From contig NC_135263.1 of the NCBI RefSeq assembly GCF_964204865.1, forward strand, positions 1,736,001 to 1,800,000: DNA of 64,000 nt, given 5' to 3'. The first letter of the stretch is position 1, and the number at the start of each line of letters is the position of its first letter. The DNA comes from Styela clava. Taxonomy: Eukaryota. Positions 51,800-62,386 of the stretch are shown piece by piece. The position numbers and the translations under genes were made by a program. Below the pieces are notes generated by a model. It did not search any database and was not told the origin of the DNA. It saw only the letters and a program-made list of their open reading frames with translations.

Positions 51800-51818
51800 A
51801 TTACCTTTCAATTTTCAG
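51800..51818 (+). promoter_or_regulatory. Splice acceptor 36 nt upstream of the start codon (cis 5'-UTR intron or trans-splice site)
   Basis: TTACCTTTCAATTTTCAG| with AG at 51817-51818. Confidence 0.6.
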
Positions 51819-51854
51819 AAAAGTAAAATAGTCGAAACTAAATTTTTATTTAAA

Positions 51855-52662
51855 ATGGTTTACTTCAATTTCAACATGAGGAAGGTACTTAAATTTTTAT
51901 TGCTTACGGCCGTTGTATTTTATCTCCTCGACGCCGGAGTCGATGCAGGAAAATCCCGTAGACGAAGAAAAAAAGACCGGCGTTCAAAACGTACCGACGC
52001 CGAAAAAGAAGCGAGGCGAAACCGCAAGGAACGAAAAACACGGGAAGAAAACTTCGGTACCGAAGTGAATGAAACAAAACAACCCTTTCCTACTTTAGTA
52101 CAATTATTAAGGTTACAGCAATTGCAAGGACATAAAGATAAACTTGAACGGCCCAAGATTCAGCCTTATAATTATGAGGAATTCGCTGACACTATGGTGC
52201 AACGATACATGGATAAACGAAACGAGAAGCCGACCCAATCTGAAGAAATCGCGACTGTCCTTCCAGTTGTAAATGCTCGCGTTGATTTCCTAATAAAACG
52301 AGAAAAATCGAAACATTTTTACGAGCCAGATTTGACAACAAGCAGTGTCCCTGCTACTCAATTGGGACTCGTTACTGTCCACTCAGCACGCGGGAAATAT
52401 GGGCTACATTCCCGCCCTGACCCAGTATTTGGACGCTTGATTCATGTTATAGATGCTGAACGCTCCAATTCAAACTTTGGGTGCGGTACGGCTATTGCTA
52501 ATAAGCATGAAATTCCCCAAAATGGCGAGCCATGGATCGCCCTTATCCAGCGAGGACATTGCGCATTCTTCAGAAAAATCAAACTTGCCGAACGCAACAA
52601 TGCATCTGCCGTCATAATCTACGATCACAAGGAGGGAGAAGTCCCGAAAATGAACACGATAG
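51855..52662 (+). CDS. Coding exon 1 of a secreted/cell-surface PA-domain protein related to the Goliath/GRAIL (RNF130/RNF149/RNF150/RNF128) ectodomain
   Basis: Longest ORF in the window, with ATG in AAAATGG context. It encodes a hydrophobic signal peptide (…KFLLLTAVVFYLLDAGVDA) and the motifs GKYGLHS, FGCG and PWIALIQRGHCAFFRKIKLAERNNASAVIIYD, which match the Goliath-family PA domain from recall. Donor AG|GTAAGA at 52662/52663 is phase 1. The ORF-track tail KNIYIFQT is intron read-through. Confidence 0.9.
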
Positions 52663-55600
52663 GTAAGAACATTTACATATTTCAAACTTAACTAAATGAA
52701 AACTTTAATGGCGACGTTTCGCGATATTTATTTTAATACTATAATGTTCGTTCATTCAATACGGCTTTACGGTTACGACAATATTCGTTCAGCTATATCT
52801 CGCTCAAATTGGACTTGTTGCGTTGCTCACGGCTTCACGTTCAATGTTTTTGACCGGGTTTTCATTCCTAACACTTCAAATTTGTCTTGATTTAAAAATA
52901 TCTGATAAAAATAAATTCAAGGTTTGTTTCAATTTACAAATACTTAACAAAATATATTTTAGAGTGATATTTCCAATTACCCAAAGTTTAAACAAATCGT
53001 ATGAATAATCATTCCTACAACTGCTCTTAAAAATTATTTGCCGGAAATAACTTACTTTTCTTCCGAAATAAGGTATTATTTACCGGGTCCTATTTCGTTG
53101 GCGTGTTGAATAGCCCCCGTCACGCCGGAAACATAACACCTCTTCATGGCGTTTCTGGCCTATGTATATTAGGGGTAAAATCTTATCTAAAACTTGCCCC
53201 CGCTCTATACCGCTGATTCAGATTTTTTTTAGAAGAAAAGTAAATTTAACTTGCTTCGAAAGATAATTTATGCGTCGTTTTTTTTTTAAATTCACTCCGA
53301 ATAAGGCTCAGTACAAGAAGCGGGTATTGGCACATTTCGTTCAATGATCCATAATATTCACAAATTTTGCTAAATTCGACTGAAACAACAAAAAGTAAAA
53401 TAAAATTTCAGTTCTCAGCGACACCGAATTGGAAACTTTCTAGTCTTGCATGTAATCTCTTACTAGGAGTAAAAATATCAATCAAATTAACTTCAAATTT
53501 CTGATATTACTTTACGATTTTTTTAACGGTCTTGTTTTGACAAGACGTGGGTGATAGAGCATGTCTATAGGAACGTGTCTTAATCATACTTCAAAAGATT
53601 AGAAATTGTTTAATCACCCGCCCGTCAGATTTTTTTTAGGTTTTGAGAGTTTTAAAATTTGTAATATTCGTAGGGAAAATACATGAAAGTTGAAGTTTAC
53701 TGCTCACAGTTTTTTTTATAGTAAGTTGACTATGTTTTTCAAATCAGATATATAAATCTCGTTAATGAGAATATAGAGGGTGTCCAAAAAATATCATCCG
53801 ATTTTATAGTAACAACAATTTAAAATTTCTTTGTATTTGTTTATTAATAGTTTTTATATCAATTATCTTATATTAATGGTTCTCCTTTATCATACAATGA
53901 AATTTATTTAAACCTATAATTGCTGTTGTTATTACTATAACATCGGGCGAAATTTCTTGGGCACCCTGTATTATATATATAGTTAAAAGTGACTTGCCTT
54001 TACTTTCTATTCATTAAGTTTGTCTGTATATACATTCGAAATGCTGGCTAATCTATAAATACCCAGTCTTTAGAAGTATTTTTCGGTTAGAATAATTTGA
54101 TTTCATTTTTTTTATGTTTTCAATTTATTGAACAAAACCATTAAACACGGCGCCAACGACTTGATTTGCAATTTAATTTGGTTTCCTTCAAGCGATTCGG
54201 TGGCGTCCGCGTTCTGTAATAAACTTTTATGATTAACGGTAAACGAAACGATATTCCCGCCCATAAAATTTGATTGTTATATTACCACGCGCAAACGAAT
54301 ATGGGTTAAGCACATTGTTCCATCATAAAACATGCGTGATCGCTTTATTACGTCAAAATCGGATTACTTAACCCATATTTGTTAATATAATTTGGAATAA
54401 GTTGCCATAATTAAATAAACAAGGAAAGGGCAAACGGAGGCCAATAACAAGAGCATAACACTAATAACCTTTAGCTAATTATAAAAATCAAATTTTTACT
54501 ACCAAATATTTTTACCTGCCCCCCCCCCCCCCCCCTCTCCCATTTTTTCGACTTAAGTATCCTATATTCTGCTTTGCCCACACAGCTTTGTATTAAGTAG
54601 GACGGCATATACAGGTGTTTAATATATTATATATACATTCTTTGATGTTGCGTATAAAGCTGTGTAAATAGATATACCCGCGTATGAATATATTATAAAG
54701 TAGGGCAGGCTGACAGTTTGATTTCACTTTTTGTGAGAAGCTGTATTTGCGTATAGGAACGTAATAGTAAATAGTATTGGAATGTATAGTATTGGTATAC
54801 AACGTACTTTACTTCTATCTAAGGAAGTATGCGAAACCTTTCTTTGAGCAAATTTGAAAAAAAAAGAGTTTGTATGTGCATTTTGTATTAATTAAATTAT
54901 ACGATTTTTTTACATAAAAATAGACACAATATGTAAACCAAATCGGGTCCTCGGGTGGCTCGGGCCTCACACGTGGTTTTACATCATTATTCAAACTTGT
55001 CCGTATATAGTGATGTGACCTTTAAGCGTGAAGAGACAATTTGACTTTGGCTTCAACCAGCGGCTTGGTTTAATAATTCCGCGTATATTCAGTGCTGTTT
55101 TGCTTGCAACAGAAGTGTTGCAACCTTGTTTTGAGCGGACTTGTATAAAAGAATATGCGTTCGCTAGCAATATTGTACATATATTTTGCTTATAATGAAT
55201 AATCTAAAATGAAGCCTTTTCGTATATATGGTTTATATTCGTAAAGTATCTGGAATTCCTTGTTATATAGTCGGCCGCGCACCACATAAACACTTATATG
55301 ATACACTTATACAAATCTCCTTTTACCACTCGGTATCTTTTGATGCAACGTATATTGGACAGATGGAAATCAGGGAAAGTTGAAAACAAAAAACTTTTTT
55401 GATATCACACACTTGAATAAATCTCTTAGATACATAGATATATGTCGATAGCTCATTTTTCTAGGAACGGATTAAAATATTGAGTCGTGAAGTGTTTTTC
55501 AGTGAATATCAAACGGCGATGTAGTTTGATGATTTTTGAGGGGATTTAGGAATATATGTCAATGGCGTAGTATCTGTTAATCTACCCAAACAAGTTTATT

Positions 55601-57856
55601 TTGCATTTTCGATCAGCGTCGAACAACTGAAAAAATCTAGATAAAATAAAATGATTATCTAGTGAAGTTATTCTTAAAATGGCTGATAATATATGTATAT
55701 TTAGAAAGTTATAATTTAAAATTATGTAATATAAGTGAATGTCTAAAAACAATTATATTTTCGGCTTTATCATGCAAAAATTGAATCAAAGTAAGTAAGG
55801 GCATTCTTTAATATTCGAAAATACAATGCAATGCGTGGGGCAACGATTTTAAAGTATGTAGAAGATATACACGCAATATACATCATTCAATTGTCGGTAT
55901 ATGCAAATATCGTGTATTTGAATTTGAATACAAAAGCGCGGGAAAGTAAATAATTATGAATTCGGAAGGATTAGTGTTCGCATCCGCCAAATCCTTTCCT
56001 ACTTGGCGGATAAGAAAAGGCGCGACTTCAGGGATTATGCAAATCGCCTTTAGCATTATAATCCCTTTATGTATATTCACCTTTTACATGAGCTCTCCCT
56101 TTAAACAATAAGCCCCTCCCTTTAAAATTCAATAATCTTGACCTAGTTGATTATGATTTAACAATAGTTAATTATGATCTAACAATGGATTCGCAAATTA
56201 GCGTCTCCGCTGGGAAATTTTGTGGCGAAAATCGGGAAACTAATTGTGGCGTAATAATTAGCGATATTGAATATGAAAGCTGTCTCGTTAGCGGAAGCGC
56301 CGCGGGAAGTTGTTATTACATTGATAATTCTTTCAAGAAGTGTTTAAATAACTTAACAATGATGACATTAGCTTAGGAGTCTTTATCCATCATCCCTACC
56401 TTTTTTTATTTATGTGGTTATGTGGGGCTGGCAGAGTAGGGATGCTTAAGCCATTATCTCGACTTGAGTTTAACTCGCCAACTTTGAAGCTTATTTTAAT
56501 CCACTGAAGGTTAAATTACAAACGAAATTTCCTTACTGCGTCGTAAAAAACGAAAAATGAGAAATATTTTTACGTAATTTAAGTGACTTTTGCGCAACAA
56601 ATATAAAACTATACACAGAGTTTAATAATATGTAACAGCAAACAGTGAACTCAAAGGTTACGCGCCACAAACGCTCAACGCAAACTTTGCTATCTTGTTC
56701 TGTTTGTATTTAAGCTTTAACACGATAATCATGCACCCGTCGCGTGACCCGCACCTTCATATTCGTTGATATAAATTGACCCCAAAAATGTTATTTTGGG
56801 GCTTTAGTGGCAAGGCTTTAAATATAAATACCATAATTTAGTAACATACACTTTTAAATCCAAATCGCAAATTAAAAAAAATCGTAGAATAACGAGTGCA
56901 AGCGAACTGAAGTTGTTACTTTATTTATAACTTTAAAATTTGGAATTTTTCGAAGTATTGACCGACGCCGAAAATATACCGGATCTGTACATTTAAATAC
57001 CTTCAAATAGAGGATTTGGCCATGCCATGCATGGTTCGGGTCTAAAACATTGTATTTTGATTATGTTTTAAGTCAATACCATACATGGCCGATTATGGCT
57101 ATTCGCTCTGAAGGCGCTAACAATTAACAGAGCTCATTAGCCTTAAGCAAGCCGAGTTATCTATGCAATGTTTATCTTAAGCCCACAGAAATGTCTAAAA
57201 TATGATTAATGAGAGAAATATAGTGCACTTATGTAATTAAATACTGATATGTGGGTCGATAAATCATATTTTGATTGTTTCGGCGGAGTCCGCCCTTTCA
57301 TCTTTGAAAACTGGCATTGTTTCGATGACATACGCGATGAAACAAATGCAAAATCATGTTCAATACAAGTTTTGAACCAAAATATCAATCCCATAGAAAC
57401 GAAGGCTAATTGGTTACTTCTTAACCACTTTCATTTAGCATTAATTCGTTGGCGTCCGCGCTTTCATTGTTTTTGTTACGACTACGTCTGCCCATTTATC
57501 TTACGAAATATAAAATCATAGTAAATCGCCGACGTTTGCGCTTTCAATATTTTCAGTTTTGTTTGTTTCGTTCACGTCTGCCCTTAGTGTTTCGGATTTT
57601 GTTTACTTATCAACACATTATTAATTACTAGTAATTCGTTCGCGTCCGCGCTTTTGATATATTTCAATTTTATGTTTCATCTACTTCCGCCTTTAATATA
57701 GCTGTGGATATTATTTACTTTTGAACACAATGGTAAGATGTTGTTTATTTTTCTCACGAAAACGACACTCACATATTTGGATTTATTCCATCACGTTGTT
57801 AAACGACACTTCAGCTAAATTTTATCCAGCCTAAAAATTTTGTTTTTCGTTCACAG
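52663..57856 (+). other. Phase-1 GT-AG intron (5194 bp) of the PA-domain gene
   Basis: GTAAGA donor and polypyrimidine-CAG acceptor; the reading frame is preserved across the junction. Confidence 0.85.
53776..53968. mobile_element. Tc1/mariner MITE, CAGGGTGTCCAAAA subfamily, intronic (other copies at about 42014-42178 and from 26772)
   Basis: TA|GAGGGTGTCCAAAAAAT...ATTTCTTGGGCACCCTG|TA; body GATTTTATAGTAACAACAATT shared with 42014-42178. Confidence 0.75.
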
Positions 57857-58113
57857 GAACCAATATCGTGTCTCTCGCAATCAGCAAACACGACGGACGT
57901 AAAGTAGCCAGACTCGCCGACAGCGGGACAAAGGTTGTCGTTAACATTGATGTCGCGATTCCAACGTCAGACAGCACGACAACACCAGACAATTCAGTAC
58001 ATGAAAGGTTACTTTCCACAGAAGGAAATTCATCTGTGACGAACAATGGAGCTATTATTACAACATTGTTTGCTGCTATAATTGCAGTTTTATTTCAAAC
58101 AATGACGTCATAA
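57857..58113 (+). CDS. Coding exon 2 (terminal): end of PA domain, Ser/Thr linker and hydrophobic C-terminal GPI-signal-like tail
   Basis: Acceptor TGTTTTTCGTTCACAG| at 57856. The phase-1 junction gives G|GA ACC AAT ATC GTG (…MNTIG-TNIVSLAISKHDGRKVARLADSGTKVVVNIDV), in frame with ORF 57868-58113 and completing the PA fold. TAA at 58111-58113. The spliced CDS is 1065 nt, 354 aa. Confidence 0.85.
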
Positions 58114-58189
58114 AACGGATTATTACGTCAACAGACTCATTTCGAACGCTTCCGCATTGATATCGGAAACGAACGAACTAAAAAACTCG

Positions 58190-58340
58190 AATAAAAAGAG
58201 TTTCGAATCGAACTCCGAAGTAACGAATTATCTCAATTAATCCGAATCTCAACGAATACGAACTATCACACGAGTATCCGAATTTTGCATGCTACAGGAT
58301 TATATCAACATCTGCTTTTCTAACTTTCTGGAAGAATAAA
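58190..58340 (+). promoter_or_regulatory. Candidate polyadenylation signals of the PA-domain gene
   Basis: AATAAA at 58190-58195 and 58335-58340, downstream of the stop codon. The hexamer is common in AT-rich DNA. Confidence 0.35.
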
Positions 58341-59797
58341 GCAAATGCAAAAAGGTAAATATTCATTTAAATAATTTTCTCAAATATCAAACCTCGTGCC
58401 CACGTTCCACCCAGGGTGTACTAAATTAGCTACGCAATGTCAAACCGGAAAGATTCCAGTTTCCCAAAATAGTATCCGCCTTTGCATAGCTCTCGGAGTG
58501 AAATAGTCTTGTAAATAAAAAAAATTAAATGGGTGTACTGAGAGCACATCCTAATAACTTAAGTAATTCATCAGATAATTAACATCCAATGAAATATTAA
58601 GTAATTTATTCTTAAAAGGCTTAAGAAAAAAAAATTGAAGGTGAATTATCCTAGGTCCACCCAGGTCACGTATAGTTATTGCGTTAAAGCTTTTATTTAA
58701 TTAAATTCTTTTTTCTTCTCAGGAATAAAAATGCTCGAGTCCGCTATGATCACCCACAACGTTCAACTAATACTTGAAAAAGGATTTAAAGACCAATAGA
58801 CATCCCCGCCGTCTTATCAAACCCCCAATTTCGTGCAACAACTGAGCTTGTAGAAGCGTCGTATTTCGATGGATCCATCATCAATGAAGCTTCTCTCTTT
58901 TTATCGAGGAGTCGCCAACCCCACTCCCCCCCTTCAGAAAATAAAGAAGGGAAAATTGTTTTACTCAAATCACCCACGACAGAAGCCCCCGTTTCGTGCT
59001 ACAGCTGAGCTGATAGAAGCGTTTAATGAATTCGCCATTTATCTAATAATATATAAATATCAAAAATAAAGAAAAGACAATCGTTATACAATAATTTACT
59101 CTCCGGTATTCGTCGTAAAGAACGACACACAAATCCGCGCGCCTCTCGGTCCGATTTTACAACGAGCGTTGACTACATATGAAAATTGCTATAAAATATG
59201 ATGCTTTATAGTTAGTGCCTGGTATTTAGAGTTGATATTCTTCCAATTTTTTCGGGGTTCCCCCTCCCTGATTTTTTTTTTCTCAATTCACATTAATTTT
59301 GAATTTTTACTTTTTGATTGAAATAACATACTATTGATTTTTATTTTATCAAAATTTTATTATTTTCAACGTTAAACTACTATTCCAACTAGACAGACAA
59401 TATCGTCAAATTATCATCATATCATACATGGTCGTAGATTGTAATTCACATTTGAATCTACGTATGATGTCATAATAGTCTGCCGATATTTTCAAATCTA
59501 TGGATTCAGCCTAAAGACGCATCAAACTTGTATTTTTATTTTTTTTTGAATTTTTCGCCTTTTTTGTTAGTTTTACCGAATTTTTTACTTTTACGATGTT
59601 CCTCCCTCATTAATTATATTTCGCACTGTGTATTGTGACGTCATGGTGTTATTGTTATTACTATTCTTTCACGCATTATTTTGTAATAAAATATTTCACA
59701 ATTCACAATACATTTTCAATTGCCATATTGTTTGTGGGCGGGGCTAGGACAAAGATAACATAGTAGGTGGTTGGCCTTAAGAGTGTACTTGGAAAGC

Positions 59798-60647: not shown

Positions 60648-61015
60648 GTGTGTTCTTGGCGTATCTTGGTCTATATTTCGCACATACACTTGGCATGTAG
60701 AAAAAACTAAAAGAAACATCACTTGGTAAGATGAAAACTATTCAGACGTTTACATTTATTGAATTACGCGTTTAGCAACACCATAGCGCCCTCTATATTC
60801 AGTTTACACTCAATCCACAAAATCTATCAAAGTGTGTTCTTGGCGTATCTTGGTCTATATTTCGCACATACACTTGGCATGTAGAAAAAACTAAAAGAAA
60901 CATCACTTGGTAAGATGAAAACTATTCAGACGTTTACATTTATTGAATTACGCGTTTAGCAACACCATAGCGCCCTCTATATTCAGTTTACACTCAATCC
61001 ACAAAATCTATCAAA
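60648..61015. repeat. Tandem duplication, 2 x 184 bp, apparently identical
   Basis: 60648-60831 is repeated at 60832-61015. Confidence 0.95.
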
Positions 61016-62386
61016 GCATATTTTTGATGAGTTAGCAAAACTAAATTACAGTAAAATTAGAGCAAATTTAACTGCATTGATCTCACAGTAAATCTGGAAA
61101 ATGTAATGTCAAATCACGGAGCACAACGGTCGCAGAGTAACCTACAATTTATCTAAGCTCACGACATCTGGAAACCATCAATTACTGAGAGTCAAACAAG
61201 AAAAATTCTTTCGTGAAATTTGTGCGAAAGCGACGAAACAATAGATATCGCTTTGTTAACTTTTACGGGTACAAGTTTTTACTAACCGATCAAATTTGTT
61301 GGGGAAAGCAAAATAAAACTAGTTATAAATTATAGTATTCAAGGCATTTTGTAAAGTATACACCCTCTTTGATTTGTCATGTTCATGTCATTTGCGGCTT
61401 GTTTTCTTACCCTTTAACAGCATTTTATGCCAAATTTCACTCGGATCTTTGCACTATTCACCATTTTTTATACCATAAGAATTATTAACAACAGGAACAA
61501 ATCTTAACATACCTTAGCGCGTGATTTAAAGTGAATAGCCACCCTAAAAATCTATGGTACTGCTATACATCTCTTTTCAAAGCAGGGCACTGAAATGGGA
61601 GCATAAATTCATCCTTATTCCTAATTCGCTTTTTAGAAAGCAGTCTCTACAGTGAGCAGTCAAAGTTGTTTGAAAAACAGAACACTAAAATAAACTTTTA
61701 CTATAAATAATTAAAGTAATTTATGAAATATAAAAAAGCAAGTATCCAAAATTATCAAAGTTTTTTTCTGTTTCTAATTGAGGAATATAAACATATAAAT
61801 TGAGTGATCGATTCATTACACTCTTGGTAAGGTTTGGTAAAGAGCATCTTGTGGTTGCTGCTTTTCGAAAACTGATCTGCGACAAAACCGATATATGTAC
61901 GTGACACAGCGCTCTACCAACTTGAACGGGTACAAATTTTAAGTAAAAGCTCAAATTTGTTTGGGAGAAGCCCTCCTTACCTACAAAAACTTGTAAAAAA
62001 TATTCAGAGTTTGGCATTTCATGCACTAACTTATAAAATAACAATTCAACGACAAAATTTACTATCTGCGAAAGTAAACAAAGTTCTAGTGAAGGGGTAA
62101 TATATATTGTATATATTTTTACCTGTCTCGCTGTTTTTCATTAATTTGAAGCGTCCGTGTATTTTTCGATTTGTCTCCACATACTTTCATTTGAGACGTA
62201 CGTCGACACTACTTCTATATTTTTTTACAGTATTCTATAACAAATTTCACTCCGATCACAGAACGCAATCACCATACGTGATATATATATATACCTAAAT
62301 AGTATGAACAAGTAAAAGAAACCTTTTCTAGTACCCCCCCCCCCCCCCCCACTCTTCAAAAATAACAAATTAGTAATCATCTAGTT

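What the first reader, a model, noticed from the sequence alone, without database searches (positions are those of the whole stretch)
51855..58113. RING-less, probably GPI-anchored Goliath/GRAIL-type PA-domain protein
Seen: the spliced 354-aa product is signal peptide + pro-region + PA domain + Ser/Thr linker (PTSDSTTTPDNS) + small-residue cluster (EGNSS) + short spacer + hydrophobic tail (AIITTLFAAIIAVLF) + QTMTS-stop. It has no cytoplasmic domain, and I found no RING-H2 coding sequence in the remaining 5.9 kb. Established: PA domains with GxYGxxS and WIAL(I/L)xRGxC motifs belong to PA-TM-RING E3 ligases (Goliath/RNF130, RNF149, RNF150, GRAIL/RNF128), where the PA domain is the luminal substrate-recognition module. 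The small-residue/spacer/hydrophobic-end pattern is the GPI-attachment signal. Inference: this is a ligase-dead, lipid-anchored derivative that could act as a decoy protecting receptors from the true ligase, or as a stand-alone surface receptor.
Basis: partly seen in the sequence, partly recalled or inferred. Interest (0 to 1): 0.8.

Follow-up and report, generated by a model that had tools for sequence, protein, structure and literature searches.

The report
RING-less Pen-1-type PA-domain surface protein
A sea-squirt gene encodes the binding domain of a ubiquitin-ligase family without the ligase part and probably carries a lipid anchor; it is real and expressed, but it belongs to an ascidian family (Pen-1/Rnf149-related) whose missing RING domain is already in print.

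Summary
Window 51855-58113 (+) carries the coding part of Styela clava LOC120327794. In three RNA-like runs from three studies, one contig each joins 52662|57857 (GT..AG); a DNA-like run does not.

The protein has a signal peptide, a polybasic stretch, a PA domain, a disordered linker and a C-terminal hydrophobic tail. The PA domain scores Pfam E 2e-10, and its best solved match is GRAIL/RNF128 3ICU. No RING was found in the protein or in 45,887 bases downstream.

It is not a new kind. It sits in a supported clade (95/96) with Halocynthia HrPEN-1, Phallusia PEN-1 and the Ciona proteins. For Ciona Rnf149-r/Pen-1, Vitrinel et al. 2023 already reported the missing RING. They also tested the "natural dominant-negative of Rnf150" idea and ruled it out.

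What seems new is the GPI reading. A small-residue site, spacer and terminal hydrophobic tail occur in 9 of 9 family proteins with complete C-termini, against 1 of 46 RING-bearing relatives. This is a home-made rule, not a trained predictor.

The transcript also splices on, but only to a non-coding 3'UTR exon (58723-~59096).

The parts
51818..51854 (+). minimum 5'UTR
   Evidence: X1 record 1 (1357 nt) has its position 583 at window 52400, so it starts about 51818.
51855..52662 (+). coding exon 1 (residues 1-269 plus the first base of Gly270)
   Evidence: Translation. 100% identical to NCBI protein P0001. Donor GT at 52663. Junction seen in three runs.
51855..51947 (+). predicted signal peptide (residues 1-31; h-region FLLLTAVVFYLL 14-25; ...DAGVDA|G)
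   Evidence: 12-residue h-region found. The cleavage site is my reading, not a predictor's. The motif YLLDAGV(D/E)A is shared with P0002, P0003 and P0006; P0007 has a close variant.
51948..52052 (+). polybasic stretch (residues 32-66), holding RSKR|T, a furin-type site by consensus
   Evidence: 20 K+R in the 50 residues after the h-region, against 4-8 in three RING-bearing relatives. RSKRT is shared by P0001, P0002, P0003, P0006 and P0007. Cleavage is inferred.
52257..52662 (+). PA module, first part (residues ~135-269: leading strand 140-148, GKYGLHS, WIALIQRGHC, NASAV)
   Evidence: Pfam PA on exon 1: E 8.6e-9, profile positions 4-62 of 95. AlphaFold2 pLDDT 94-98 for residues 171-300 and a strand at 140-148.
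52663..57856 (+). intron 1 (5194 bases, GT..AG, phase 1)
   Evidence: Joint 52660->57855 'cut +2' in X1, X2 and X9; absent from X10, which covers the intron. Thirteen partial family proteins (P0002-P0004, P0010-P0018, P0025) end or lose similarity just after the same ...T-x-G, i.e. genomic ORFs read into an intron at this position.
57857..57963 (+). PA module, second part (residues 270-305)
   Evidence: On the database protein P0001 the Pfam PA match spans residues 194-284, profile 4-93 of 95. The 3ICU alignment covers query 176-302.
57964..58023 (+). disordered Ser/Thr-rich linker (residues 306-325)
   Evidence: pLDDT under 50 for residues 312-331. Three of the five non-synonymous differences between individuals fall here.
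58024..58047 (+). candidate omega region G-N-S-S and spacer V-T-N-N (residues 326-333)
   Evidence: The home-made rule gives omega candidates at 326 (GNS) and 327 (NSS).
58048..58113 (+). hydrophobic tail GAIITTLFAAIIAVLF (residues 334-349), QTMTS, stop 58111-58113
   Evidence: 16-residue uncharged run, mean Kyte-Doolittle 2.55, ending 5 residues from the C-terminus. Modelled as a helix 333-353.
58114..58354 (+). 3'UTR, part within exon 2
   Evidence: Contigs of X1, X2 and X9 run through the stop codon up to 58355.
58355..58722 (+). intron 2 (368 bases, GT..AG) inside the 3'UTR
   Evidence: The contigs' loose letters behind 58355 match window 58724-58753 with 2 mismatches; 0 matches expected by chance. 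GT at 58355-58356 and AG at 58721-58722.
58723..59096 (+). non-coding exon 3 (3'UTR) with AATAAA at 59065-59070
   Evidence: X9 record 20 has 374 nt beyond the junction.

Best explanation
This is an expressed three-exon Styela clava gene (LOC120327794). It encodes a 354-aa secretory protein of the ascidian Pen-1/Rnf149-related family. The parts in order are a signal peptide, a polybasic stretch, a GRAIL/RNF150-type PA domain, a disordered Ser/Thr linker and a C-terminal GPI-attachment-type signal. It has no cytoplasmic part and no RING, so it cannot be a ubiquitin ligase. Most likely the tail is exchanged for a GPI anchor in the ER. The PA domain would then be displayed on the outer face of the cell, or in the lumen of secretory and endocytic compartments, as a non-catalytic binding module (a co-receptor, or a competitor for what PA-TM-RING ligases bind). 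Shown here: the gene model, expression, the PA fold, the absence of a RING, clade membership and conservation of the tail anatomy. Inferred: signal-peptide cleavage, GPI attachment, surface location and binding role. My sub-probabilities: real RING-less Pen-1-family gene 0.95; GPI-anchored 0.6; acts through PA-domain binding outside the cytosol 0.7.
For: Gene model and RNA. The junction is in one contig each of three runs from three studies, and the DNA-like run lacks it. PA domain: Pfam E 2e-10. PDB sequence match to RNF128 3ICU: E 1.2e-5 over residues 176-302. AlphaFold2 pLDDT 94-98 over the PA core. Foldseek top hit 3ICU: E 3.7e-11, TM 0.70 normalised by target length. No RING: 8 of 8 family proteins match only PA above Pfam's cut-off and no RING family at E <= 0.1, whereas 2 of 2 controls match zf-RING_2. 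There are 0 RING-H2 pattern matches (one full and two half patterns, six frames) and no tblastn hit better than E 0.61, using six RING-bearing queries, in 45,887 bases after the stop. The nearest RING-like hits on this chromosome lie at 5.5 and 12.9 Mb, and the window at 1.74-1.80 Mb. Family: the clade of 9 tunicate RING-less PA domains has support 95/96. It holds HrPEN-1 (Q8MXW0), Phallusia 'RNF150 (PEN-1)', Ciona intestinalis LOC100175825 and C. savignyi H2ZIF4. GPI-type tail: the rule fires in 9 of 9 family proteins with complete C-termini (8 genes plus one allele), in 0 of 7 chosen controls and in 1 of 46 RING-bearing proteins held. The tails are 13-17 uncharged residues where unbroken (two shorter runs in the Ciona proteins) and end 3-6 residues from the C-terminus. 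The TM runs of six RING-bearing relatives are 26 residues long and nearly identical. Established knowledge (recalled): a hydrophobic segment this close to the stop is still inside the ribosome when translation ends, which is the usual situation of GPI signals. Function in a relative: loss of Ciona Rnf149-r disrupts pharyngeal-muscle fate (PMC10219245).
Against: No trained GPI predictor and no experiment was available; my rule is home-made and was tuned by eye. The Ciona and Phallusia tails end in NER, NKR and TEKR, which could also be read as a stop-transfer flank of a membrane helix. AlphaFold2 draws a 21-residue helix at 333-353, long enough to span a membrane. The stop codon lies 241 nt upstream of the last exon junction, a layout that in vertebrates can trigger nonsense-mediated decay (recalled). 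The runs are labelled RNA only as a guess, and contigs cannot show rare isoforms. The decoy idea, tested against Rnf150 in Ciona, was negative for that phenotype. Five of the nine listed coding differences between individuals are non-synonymous; that list was cut by the tool.
Confidence: 0.6

Rival explanations
1. The same gene and family, but the tail is a true transmembrane helix. The protein would be a type I membrane protein with a 5-residue cytoplasmic stub and no GPI anchor.
For: AlphaFold2 models a 21-residue helix at 333-353. The Ciona and Phallusia tails end in basic residues NER, NKR and TEKR. MAFFT places the tail in the same columns as the TM helix of RING-bearing relatives.
Against: The uncharged runs are only 13-17 residues, against 26 in the RING-bearing relatives. 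Small-residue tripeptides sit 4-11 residues upstream in 9 of 9 family proteins. The tail sequence is not conserved, only its character. The window protein's own tail, QTMTS, has no basic residue.
Confidence: 0.2
2. It is a soluble secreted precursor. The polybasic stretch is cut by proprotein convertases and the PA domain, or peptides from the N-terminal part, are released. The tail would be only a transient or shed anchor.
For: RSKR|T fits the furin consensus and is shared by P0001, P0002, P0003, P0006 and P0007. There are 13-21 K+R in the 50 residues after the h-region in 12 of the 14 family proteins scored, and 8-9 in the other two.
Against: No peptide motif is conserved in residues 32-135 across the family beyond basic character. 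The region has mixed confidence in the model and gave no hit in the ESM Atlas. Cleavage at RSKR would remove only about 15 residues and would not by itself release the PA domain from the tail.
Confidence: 0.1
3. It is a decaying, truncated copy of a PA-TM-RING ligase gene, or the 354-aa form is a minor isoform of a gene that normally continues to TM and RING exons.
For: The stop codon is 241 nt upstream of a further splice junction. The contigs cannot exclude rare isoforms.
Against: The same RING-less build is kept in at least 8 genes across several ascidians, and in a second S. clava gene with two PA domains. Full-length spliced forms occur in short contigs of other species (P0006 and P0007). 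All three RNA-like runs carry the stop codon. No RING was found in 45,887 bases downstream. The true RNF150-like gene lies about 11 Mb away. The Ciona relative has a loss-of-function phenotype.
Confidence: 0.03

Closest known systems
Ascidian Pen-1 / Rnf149-related (Ciona Rnf149-r KH.C2.994; Halocynthia HrPEN-1 Q8MXW0; Phallusia 'RNF150 (PEN-1)')
   Same: The build is the same: signal peptide, polybasic stretch, one PA domain, no RING, C-terminal hydrophobic tail. The proteins share one clade (95/96) and the same intron position after ...T-x-G. The missing RING is published for Ciona.
   Different: The window gene is a paralogue, not the Pen-1 orthologue. HrPEN-1 pairs with domain 1 of S. clava LOC120332810 on C17 (96/96), while the window gene groups with P0006 and P0007 (95/95). 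The window subgroup has its own N-terminal signature, YLLDAGV(D/E)A...RSKRT. Whether its mRNA is postplasmic is unknown. In the paper's main text 'GPI', 'transmembrane', 'signal peptide' and 'secreted' have 0 occurrences; 'membrane' occurs twice, in figure legends about a marker.
PA-TM-RING E3 ligases (GRAIL/RNF128, Goliath/RNF130, RNF149, RNF150)
   Same: The PA domain has the same subtype (best solved match 3ICU) and carries the GxYG and WIALIxRGxC motifs. It nests among RING-bearing proteins that their sources name RNF150 or goliath. The hydrophobic segment follows the PA domain at a similar distance.
   Different: There is no cytoplasmic region and no RING. The tail is 16 uncharged residues, not a conserved 26-residue helix. 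There is an extra N-terminal part of about 100 residues with a polybasic run.
Short RING-less PA proteins of lophotrochozoans (Littorina XP_070197716, 194 aa; Batillaria KAK7489823, 213 aa; Lingula XP_013392849, 252 aa, named 'RNF130')
   Same: A PA domain is followed by small residues and a terminal hydrophobic tail. My rule fires in 9 of 9 such short proteins examined.
   Different: They lack the polybasic N-terminal part. Five of them (not Lingula) form a separate clade with support 100/99. A single origin with the tunicate family is not rejected (AU p 0.225).
PRADC1 (secreted PA-domain-only protein of vertebrates; recalled, not tested)
   Same: It is a secretory-pathway protein whose only defined domain is PA.
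   Different: As I recall it, PRADC1 is a short soluble protein without a hydrophobic tail. No protein named PRADC1 appeared among the 33 proteins whose source names I saw. No direct comparison was made.
GPI-anchored decoy receptors such as TRAIL-R3/DcR1 (recalled analogy only)
   Same: The ectodomain of a signalling family is kept, the cytoplasmic effector part is lost, and a lipid anchor replaces the membrane helix.
   Different: The protein family is unrelated. Decoy action is not shown here, and the one test in Ciona (against Rnf150) was negative.

Membership tests
PA-TM-RING E3 ubiquitin ligases (Goliath/GRAIL group) | Luminal PA domain of the GRAIL/RNF130/RNF150 subtype | tested here: met
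   Pfam PA E 2e-10. 3ICU is the best structural match, E 3.7e-11. The domain nests among RNF150- and goliath-named proteins.
PA-TM-RING E3 ubiquitin ligases (Goliath/GRAIL group) | Transmembrane helix followed by a cytoplasmic region | tested here: not met
   The only hydrophobic segment after the PA domain ends 5 residues before the stop.
PA-TM-RING E3 ubiquitin ligases (Goliath/GRAIL group) | Cytoplasmic RING-H2 domain | tested here: not met
   No RING family at E <= 0.1 in P0001, while controls P0040 and P0005 match zf-RING_2. No RING pattern or tblastn hit in 45,887 bases downstream.
Ascidian Pen-1 / Rnf149-related | Groups with HrPEN-1, Phallusia PEN-1 and the Ciona proteins to the exclusion of RING-bearing relatives | tested here: met
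   9-row clade with support 95/96, present in 98% of 200 bootstrap trees. 19-row clade with support 98 in the wider quick tree.
Ascidian Pen-1 / Rnf149-related | PA domain as the only defined domain, and no RING | tested here: met
   8 of 8 family proteins. Stated for Ciona in PMC10219245.
Ascidian Pen-1 / Rnf149-related | Direct orthology to Pen-1 itself | tested here: not met
   HrPEN-1 pairs with the C17 gene LOC120332810 (96/96). The window gene forms its own group with P0006 and P0007 (95/95). Deeper branches are unresolved (49/21, 65/0).
Ascidian Pen-1 / Rnf149-related | Maternal mRNA localised to the posterior pole (postplasmic/PEM RNA) | not testable with these tools
   This needs in situ hybridisation on S. 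clava eggs and embryos. The runs are coded and kept as contigs.
GPI-anchored proteins | N-terminal signal peptide | tested here: inconclusive
   12-residue h-region with basic residues before it and ...VDA|G after it. No SignalP was available.
GPI-anchored proteins | C-terminal signal: small omega and omega+2 residues, a polar spacer, and a hydrophobic tail reaching nearly to the C-terminus | tested here: met
   G326-N-S or N327-S-S, then VTNN(G), then a 16-residue tail 5 residues from the end. The rule fires in 9 of 9 family proteins, 0 of 7 chosen controls and 1 of 46 RING-bearing proteins. The rule is home-made.
GPI-anchored proteins | Anchor attachment shown (PI-PLC release, loss of the C-terminal peptide) | not testable with these tools
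   This is an experiment. No published test was found in three searches.
PRADC1-type secreted PA-only proteins | Short soluble protein with no membrane tail, grouping with PRADC1 | not tested

The most novel reading that the evidence does not exclude
The whole Pen-1/Rnf149-related family, including the Ciona gene needed for pharyngeal-muscle fate, would be GPI-anchored PA-domain proteins on the outside of the cell. Rnf149-r would then act at the cell surface or in the endocytic lumen, possibly beyond the cell that makes it, and not as a cytosolic 'ligase-like post-transcriptional regulator'. Similar RING-less PA proteins with terminal tails in gastropods, and one in a brachiopod, would make the conversion of PA-TM-RING ligases into lipid-anchored ectodomains a recurrent evolutionary route.
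Probability: 0.45. Interest if true: 0.55.

Novelty: new member of a known kind. Interest (0 to 1): 0.35.

Why it matters
On its own the gene is an annotated but uncharacterised paralogue in a described ascidian family, so the find is modest. Its value lies in what the family comparison adds. Every complete member carries the anatomy of a GPI-attachment signal. That places the PA domain outside the cytosol, and the main text of the one functional paper on the family does not contain the words GPI, transmembrane, signal peptide or secreted. If true, this changes where to look for the partners of Ciona Rnf149-r in heart versus pharyngeal-muscle fate choice: surface or luminal ligands, and possibly effects on neighbouring cells. 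It also gives a cheap test (PI-PLC release). The RING-less relatives in molluscs and a brachiopod, named RNF130 or RNF150-like by their sources, show that 'ligase' names in databases can be wrong for such proteins.

Tried and rejected
1. Hidden RING or TM exons. A pattern scan (one full and two half RING-H2 patterns, six frames) and tblastn with six RING-bearing proteins over 45,887 bases after the stop found nothing better than E 0.61. A genome-wide search with P0005 placed the RING-like hits elsewhere.

2. Tail as a relic of the ancestral TM helix. MAFFT puts the two in the same columns. Local alignment scores against six TM segments are not above shuffled tails: shuffles reaching the observed score numbered 841, 175, 272, 104, 21, 539, 161 and 719 of 1000, the window protein being 841. 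Rejected as evidence; only the position is shared.

3. Independent origin of the lophotrochozoan RING-less proteins. The best tree and 98% of bootstrap trees keep them apart from the tunicate clade. The AU test does not reject a single clade (p 0.225). Left open.

4. Purifying selection from differences between individuals. Of nine listed coding differences, 4 are synonymous and 5 non-synonymous. The tool's list was cut (50 not shown), so I drew no ratio.

5. Exon 2 alone against Pfam gave nothing significant.

6. The ESM Atlas gave no usable hit for residues 27-135.

7. Pseudogene and minor-isoform readings were rejected (see the rival explanations).

8. Literature. Three searches for GPI together with Pen-1, postplasmic or PA-TM-RING terms found no such text. 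The library lacks most subscription journals, and the original HrPEN-1 and Ciona Pen-1 papers were not found in it. Supplements are closed: Figure S5 and Table S3 of PMC10219245 (domain architectures) may show a signal peptide or membrane segment that I could not see.

Full report
WHAT IS THERE. The window is G000:C18:1736001-1800000 of Styela clava. Exon 1 (51855-52662) and exon 2 (57857-58113) are separated by a 5194-base GT..AG intron in phase 1. A search with exon 1 alone returned NCBI 'uncharacterized protein LOC120327794 [Styela clava]' (P0001, 354 aa). It is 100% identical over exon 1 and carries exon 2's residues after ...MNTIG. That database protein was then used by id. The exon-1 ORF is the longest ORF of the 64-kb window.

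EXPRESSION AND 3' END. I laid contigs of three RNA-like runs from three studies (X1, X2, X9; 'RNA?' is the tool's guess) and one DNA-like run (X10) on window 52400-58399.
- Each RNA-like run has one contig that joins 52660->57855 (cut +2, GT..AG). These runs have depth in only 8, 5 and 5 of 30 bins, almost all of it on the exons.
- X10 covers 30 of 30 bins and has no such joint.
- All three RNA-like runs read through the stop codon and then leave the genome at 58355. Their loose letters match window 58724-58753 with 2 mismatches, against 0 expected by chance.
- So a second intron (58355-58722, GT..AG) lies in the 3'UTR, and a third, non-coding exon starts at 58723.
- X9's contig has 374 nt beyond that junction, which ends about 25 nt after an AATAAA at 59065-59070.
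- The stop is 241 nt upstream of the last junction.
Transcripts do splice onward, but only to an untranslated exon inside the window.

THE PROTEIN. The parts in order are:
- A signal-peptide-like N-terminus, with a 12-residue h-region.
- A polybasic stretch, with 20 K+R in the 50 residues after the h-region.
- A PA module. Pfam PA scores E 2e-10 on residues 194-284. AlphaFold2 gives pLDDT 94-98 over residues 171-300, plus a leading strand at 140-148.
- A linker with pLDDT under 50 (residues 312-331) and a terminal helix at 333-353.
By sequence, the solved relative that covers the whole module is the RNF128/GRAIL PA domain, 3ICU (E 1.2e-5, residues 176-302). By structure, 3ICU is the top hit (E 3.7e-11, TM 0.70 by target length, 24% identity), ahead of plant VSR1 and ZNRF3 PA domains.

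NO RING. P0001 and seven relatives match only PA, while the controls P0040 and P0005 match zf-RING_2. In 45,887 bases after the stop (the rest of the window plus 40 kb fetched), no full or half RING-H2 pattern occurs in any frame. Six RING-bearing queries give nothing better than E 0.61. S. clava's own 'RNF150-like' protein (P0040/P0156) is on the same chromosome. The hits I take to be that gene lie at about 12.92 Mb, roughly 11 Mb from the window.

THE FAMILY. A search of 1.84 billion representatives gave 331 hits at E <= 0.001, of which 8 were at E <= 1e-30. The close hits are all RING-less. The informative ones are:
- Two full-length relatives, P0006 (358 aa) and P0007 (372 aa). They come from unnamed 1.7-2.9-kb contigs, so presumably from transcripts.
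- A second S. clava gene, LOC120332810 (P0008, 482 aa) on C17. Its three exons encode two tandem PA domains and a similar tail.
- HrPEN-1 of Halocynthia roretzi (Q8MXW0, 315 aa).
- From a second search: Ciona intestinalis LOC100175825 (314 aa), C. savignyi H2ZIF4 (307 aa) and Phallusia mammillata 'RNF150 (PEN-1)' (326 aa).
In a careful tree of 42 complete PA domains, the 9 tunicate RING-less domains form one clade (95/96). I left out the partial rows, P0009, and all other RING-less rows of unknown completeness. Within that clade the window protein groups with P0006 and P0007 (95/95), and HrPEN-1 groups with domain 1 of LOC120332810 (96/96). The window gene is thus a paralogue of Pen-1, not its orthologue. 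Thirteen partial family proteins stop or lose similarity right after the same ...T-x-G, mostly with 'GK' as expected from reading into GGTAAG. The intron position is therefore conserved.

WHAT IS IN PRINT. I read passages of Vitrinel, Vogel and Christiaen 2023 (PMC10219245) through 'find': the introduction, section 2.2, the discussion and the methods. Of its bioRxiv version I saw only the search listing.
- Ciona Rnf149-r (KH.C2.994) is the postplasmic RNA Pen-1. It has a PA domain but lacks the RING.
- The authors hypothesised it to be a natural dominant-negative of Rnf150. They ruled that out because loss of Rnf150 gave no phenotype and no rescue.
- Loss of Rnf149-r disrupts pharyngeal-muscle specification.
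- The words GPI, transmembrane, signal peptide and secreted do not occur in the main text; 'membrane' occurs twice, in figure legends about a marker.
That HrPEN-1 was first described as a posterior-localised maternal mRNA is my recollection, supported only by this paper's sentence.

THE GPI QUESTION. I wrote a simple rule:
- omega residue in S/N/G/A/D/C;
- omega+2 residue in G/A/S;
- a spacer of 4-11 residues;
- then 12 residues free of D/E/K/R with mean hydropathy above 1.6.
It fires in 9 of 9 family proteins with complete C-termini (P0001, P0006, P0007, P0008 and its allele P0153, P0154, P0175, P0176, P0177). It fires in 0 of 7 chosen controls and in 1 of 46 RING-bearing proteins held (P0073). 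The tail sequences differ, but the pattern recurs: GNSS-VTNNG-tail here, NGA-ISNNG-tail in P0007, GGA-MTYHRN-tail in P0006, SNAG-tail in HrPEN-1, and GSGS-spacer-tail in both Ciona species and Phallusia. By contrast, the TM helices of six RING-bearing relatives are 26-residue runs and nearly identical. This fits a signal that is selected for its character only. It is not a trained predictor, and a short-stub type I membrane protein remains possible.

WIDER PATTERN. Short RING-less PA proteins with similar tails also occur outside tunicates: Littorina saxatilis (194 aa, named 'RNF150-like'), Batillaria (213 aa) and Lingula (252 aa, named 'RNF130'). Five of them (not Lingula) form their own clade (100/99), apart from the tunicate one in the best tree. 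A single origin is not rejected (AU p 0.225).

VERDICT. The remaining new element is the family-wide GPI-type signal, which is a prediction that can be tested cheaply.

Noticed in passing
window 58355-58722 and 58723-~59096: A 368-base intron sits inside the 3'UTR and a non-coding third exon follows it. The stop codon is therefore 241 nt upstream of the last exon junction, a layout that in vertebrates can trigger nonsense-mediated decay (recalled).
   Followed up: partly
L003 (G000:C17:9817494-9820739, minus strand): A second S. clava family member (LOC120332810, 482 aa) has two tandem PA domains in three exons. Each domain is split at the same ...TIG|T position, and the protein ends in a similar tail, so this looks like an internal duplication of exon-sized units.
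   Followed up: partly
window 53800-53999 (intron 1): The DNA-like run X10 shows summed contig depth 166 here, against 3-12 in the other bins. This is probably a high-copy repeat.
   Followed up: no
window 60648-61016: A perfect tandem duplication: period 184, 2.0 copies, 100% matches.
   Followed up: no
window 54521-54538 and 62335-62352: Two long homopolymer C runs of about 16-18 bases, read. X10 shows a 7-base deletion at 54517.
   Followed up: no
window 54190-54215, 57440-57470, 57530-57560, 57630-57660 (intron 1): Short similar units of the type ...TTCG(T/G)TGGCGTCCGCG(C)TTT... recur several times, seen by eye. They may be a dispersed or degenerate tandem element.
   Followed up: no
proteins P0036, P0092: Public records name RING-less PA proteins of 194-252 aa 'RING finger protein 150-like' (Littorina) and 'E3 ubiquitin-protein ligase RNF130' (Lingula). 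These names imply a ligase activity the proteins cannot have.
   Followed up: partly
proteins P0019, P0026, P0033, P0064: Another RING-less group has a PA domain, a TM helix and a conserved short cytoplasmic tail (...RRSKYIRNKNR...VYTLQE...). Lamellibrachia satsuma KAI0237963 is one member. They cluster together in the quick tree.
   Followed up: no
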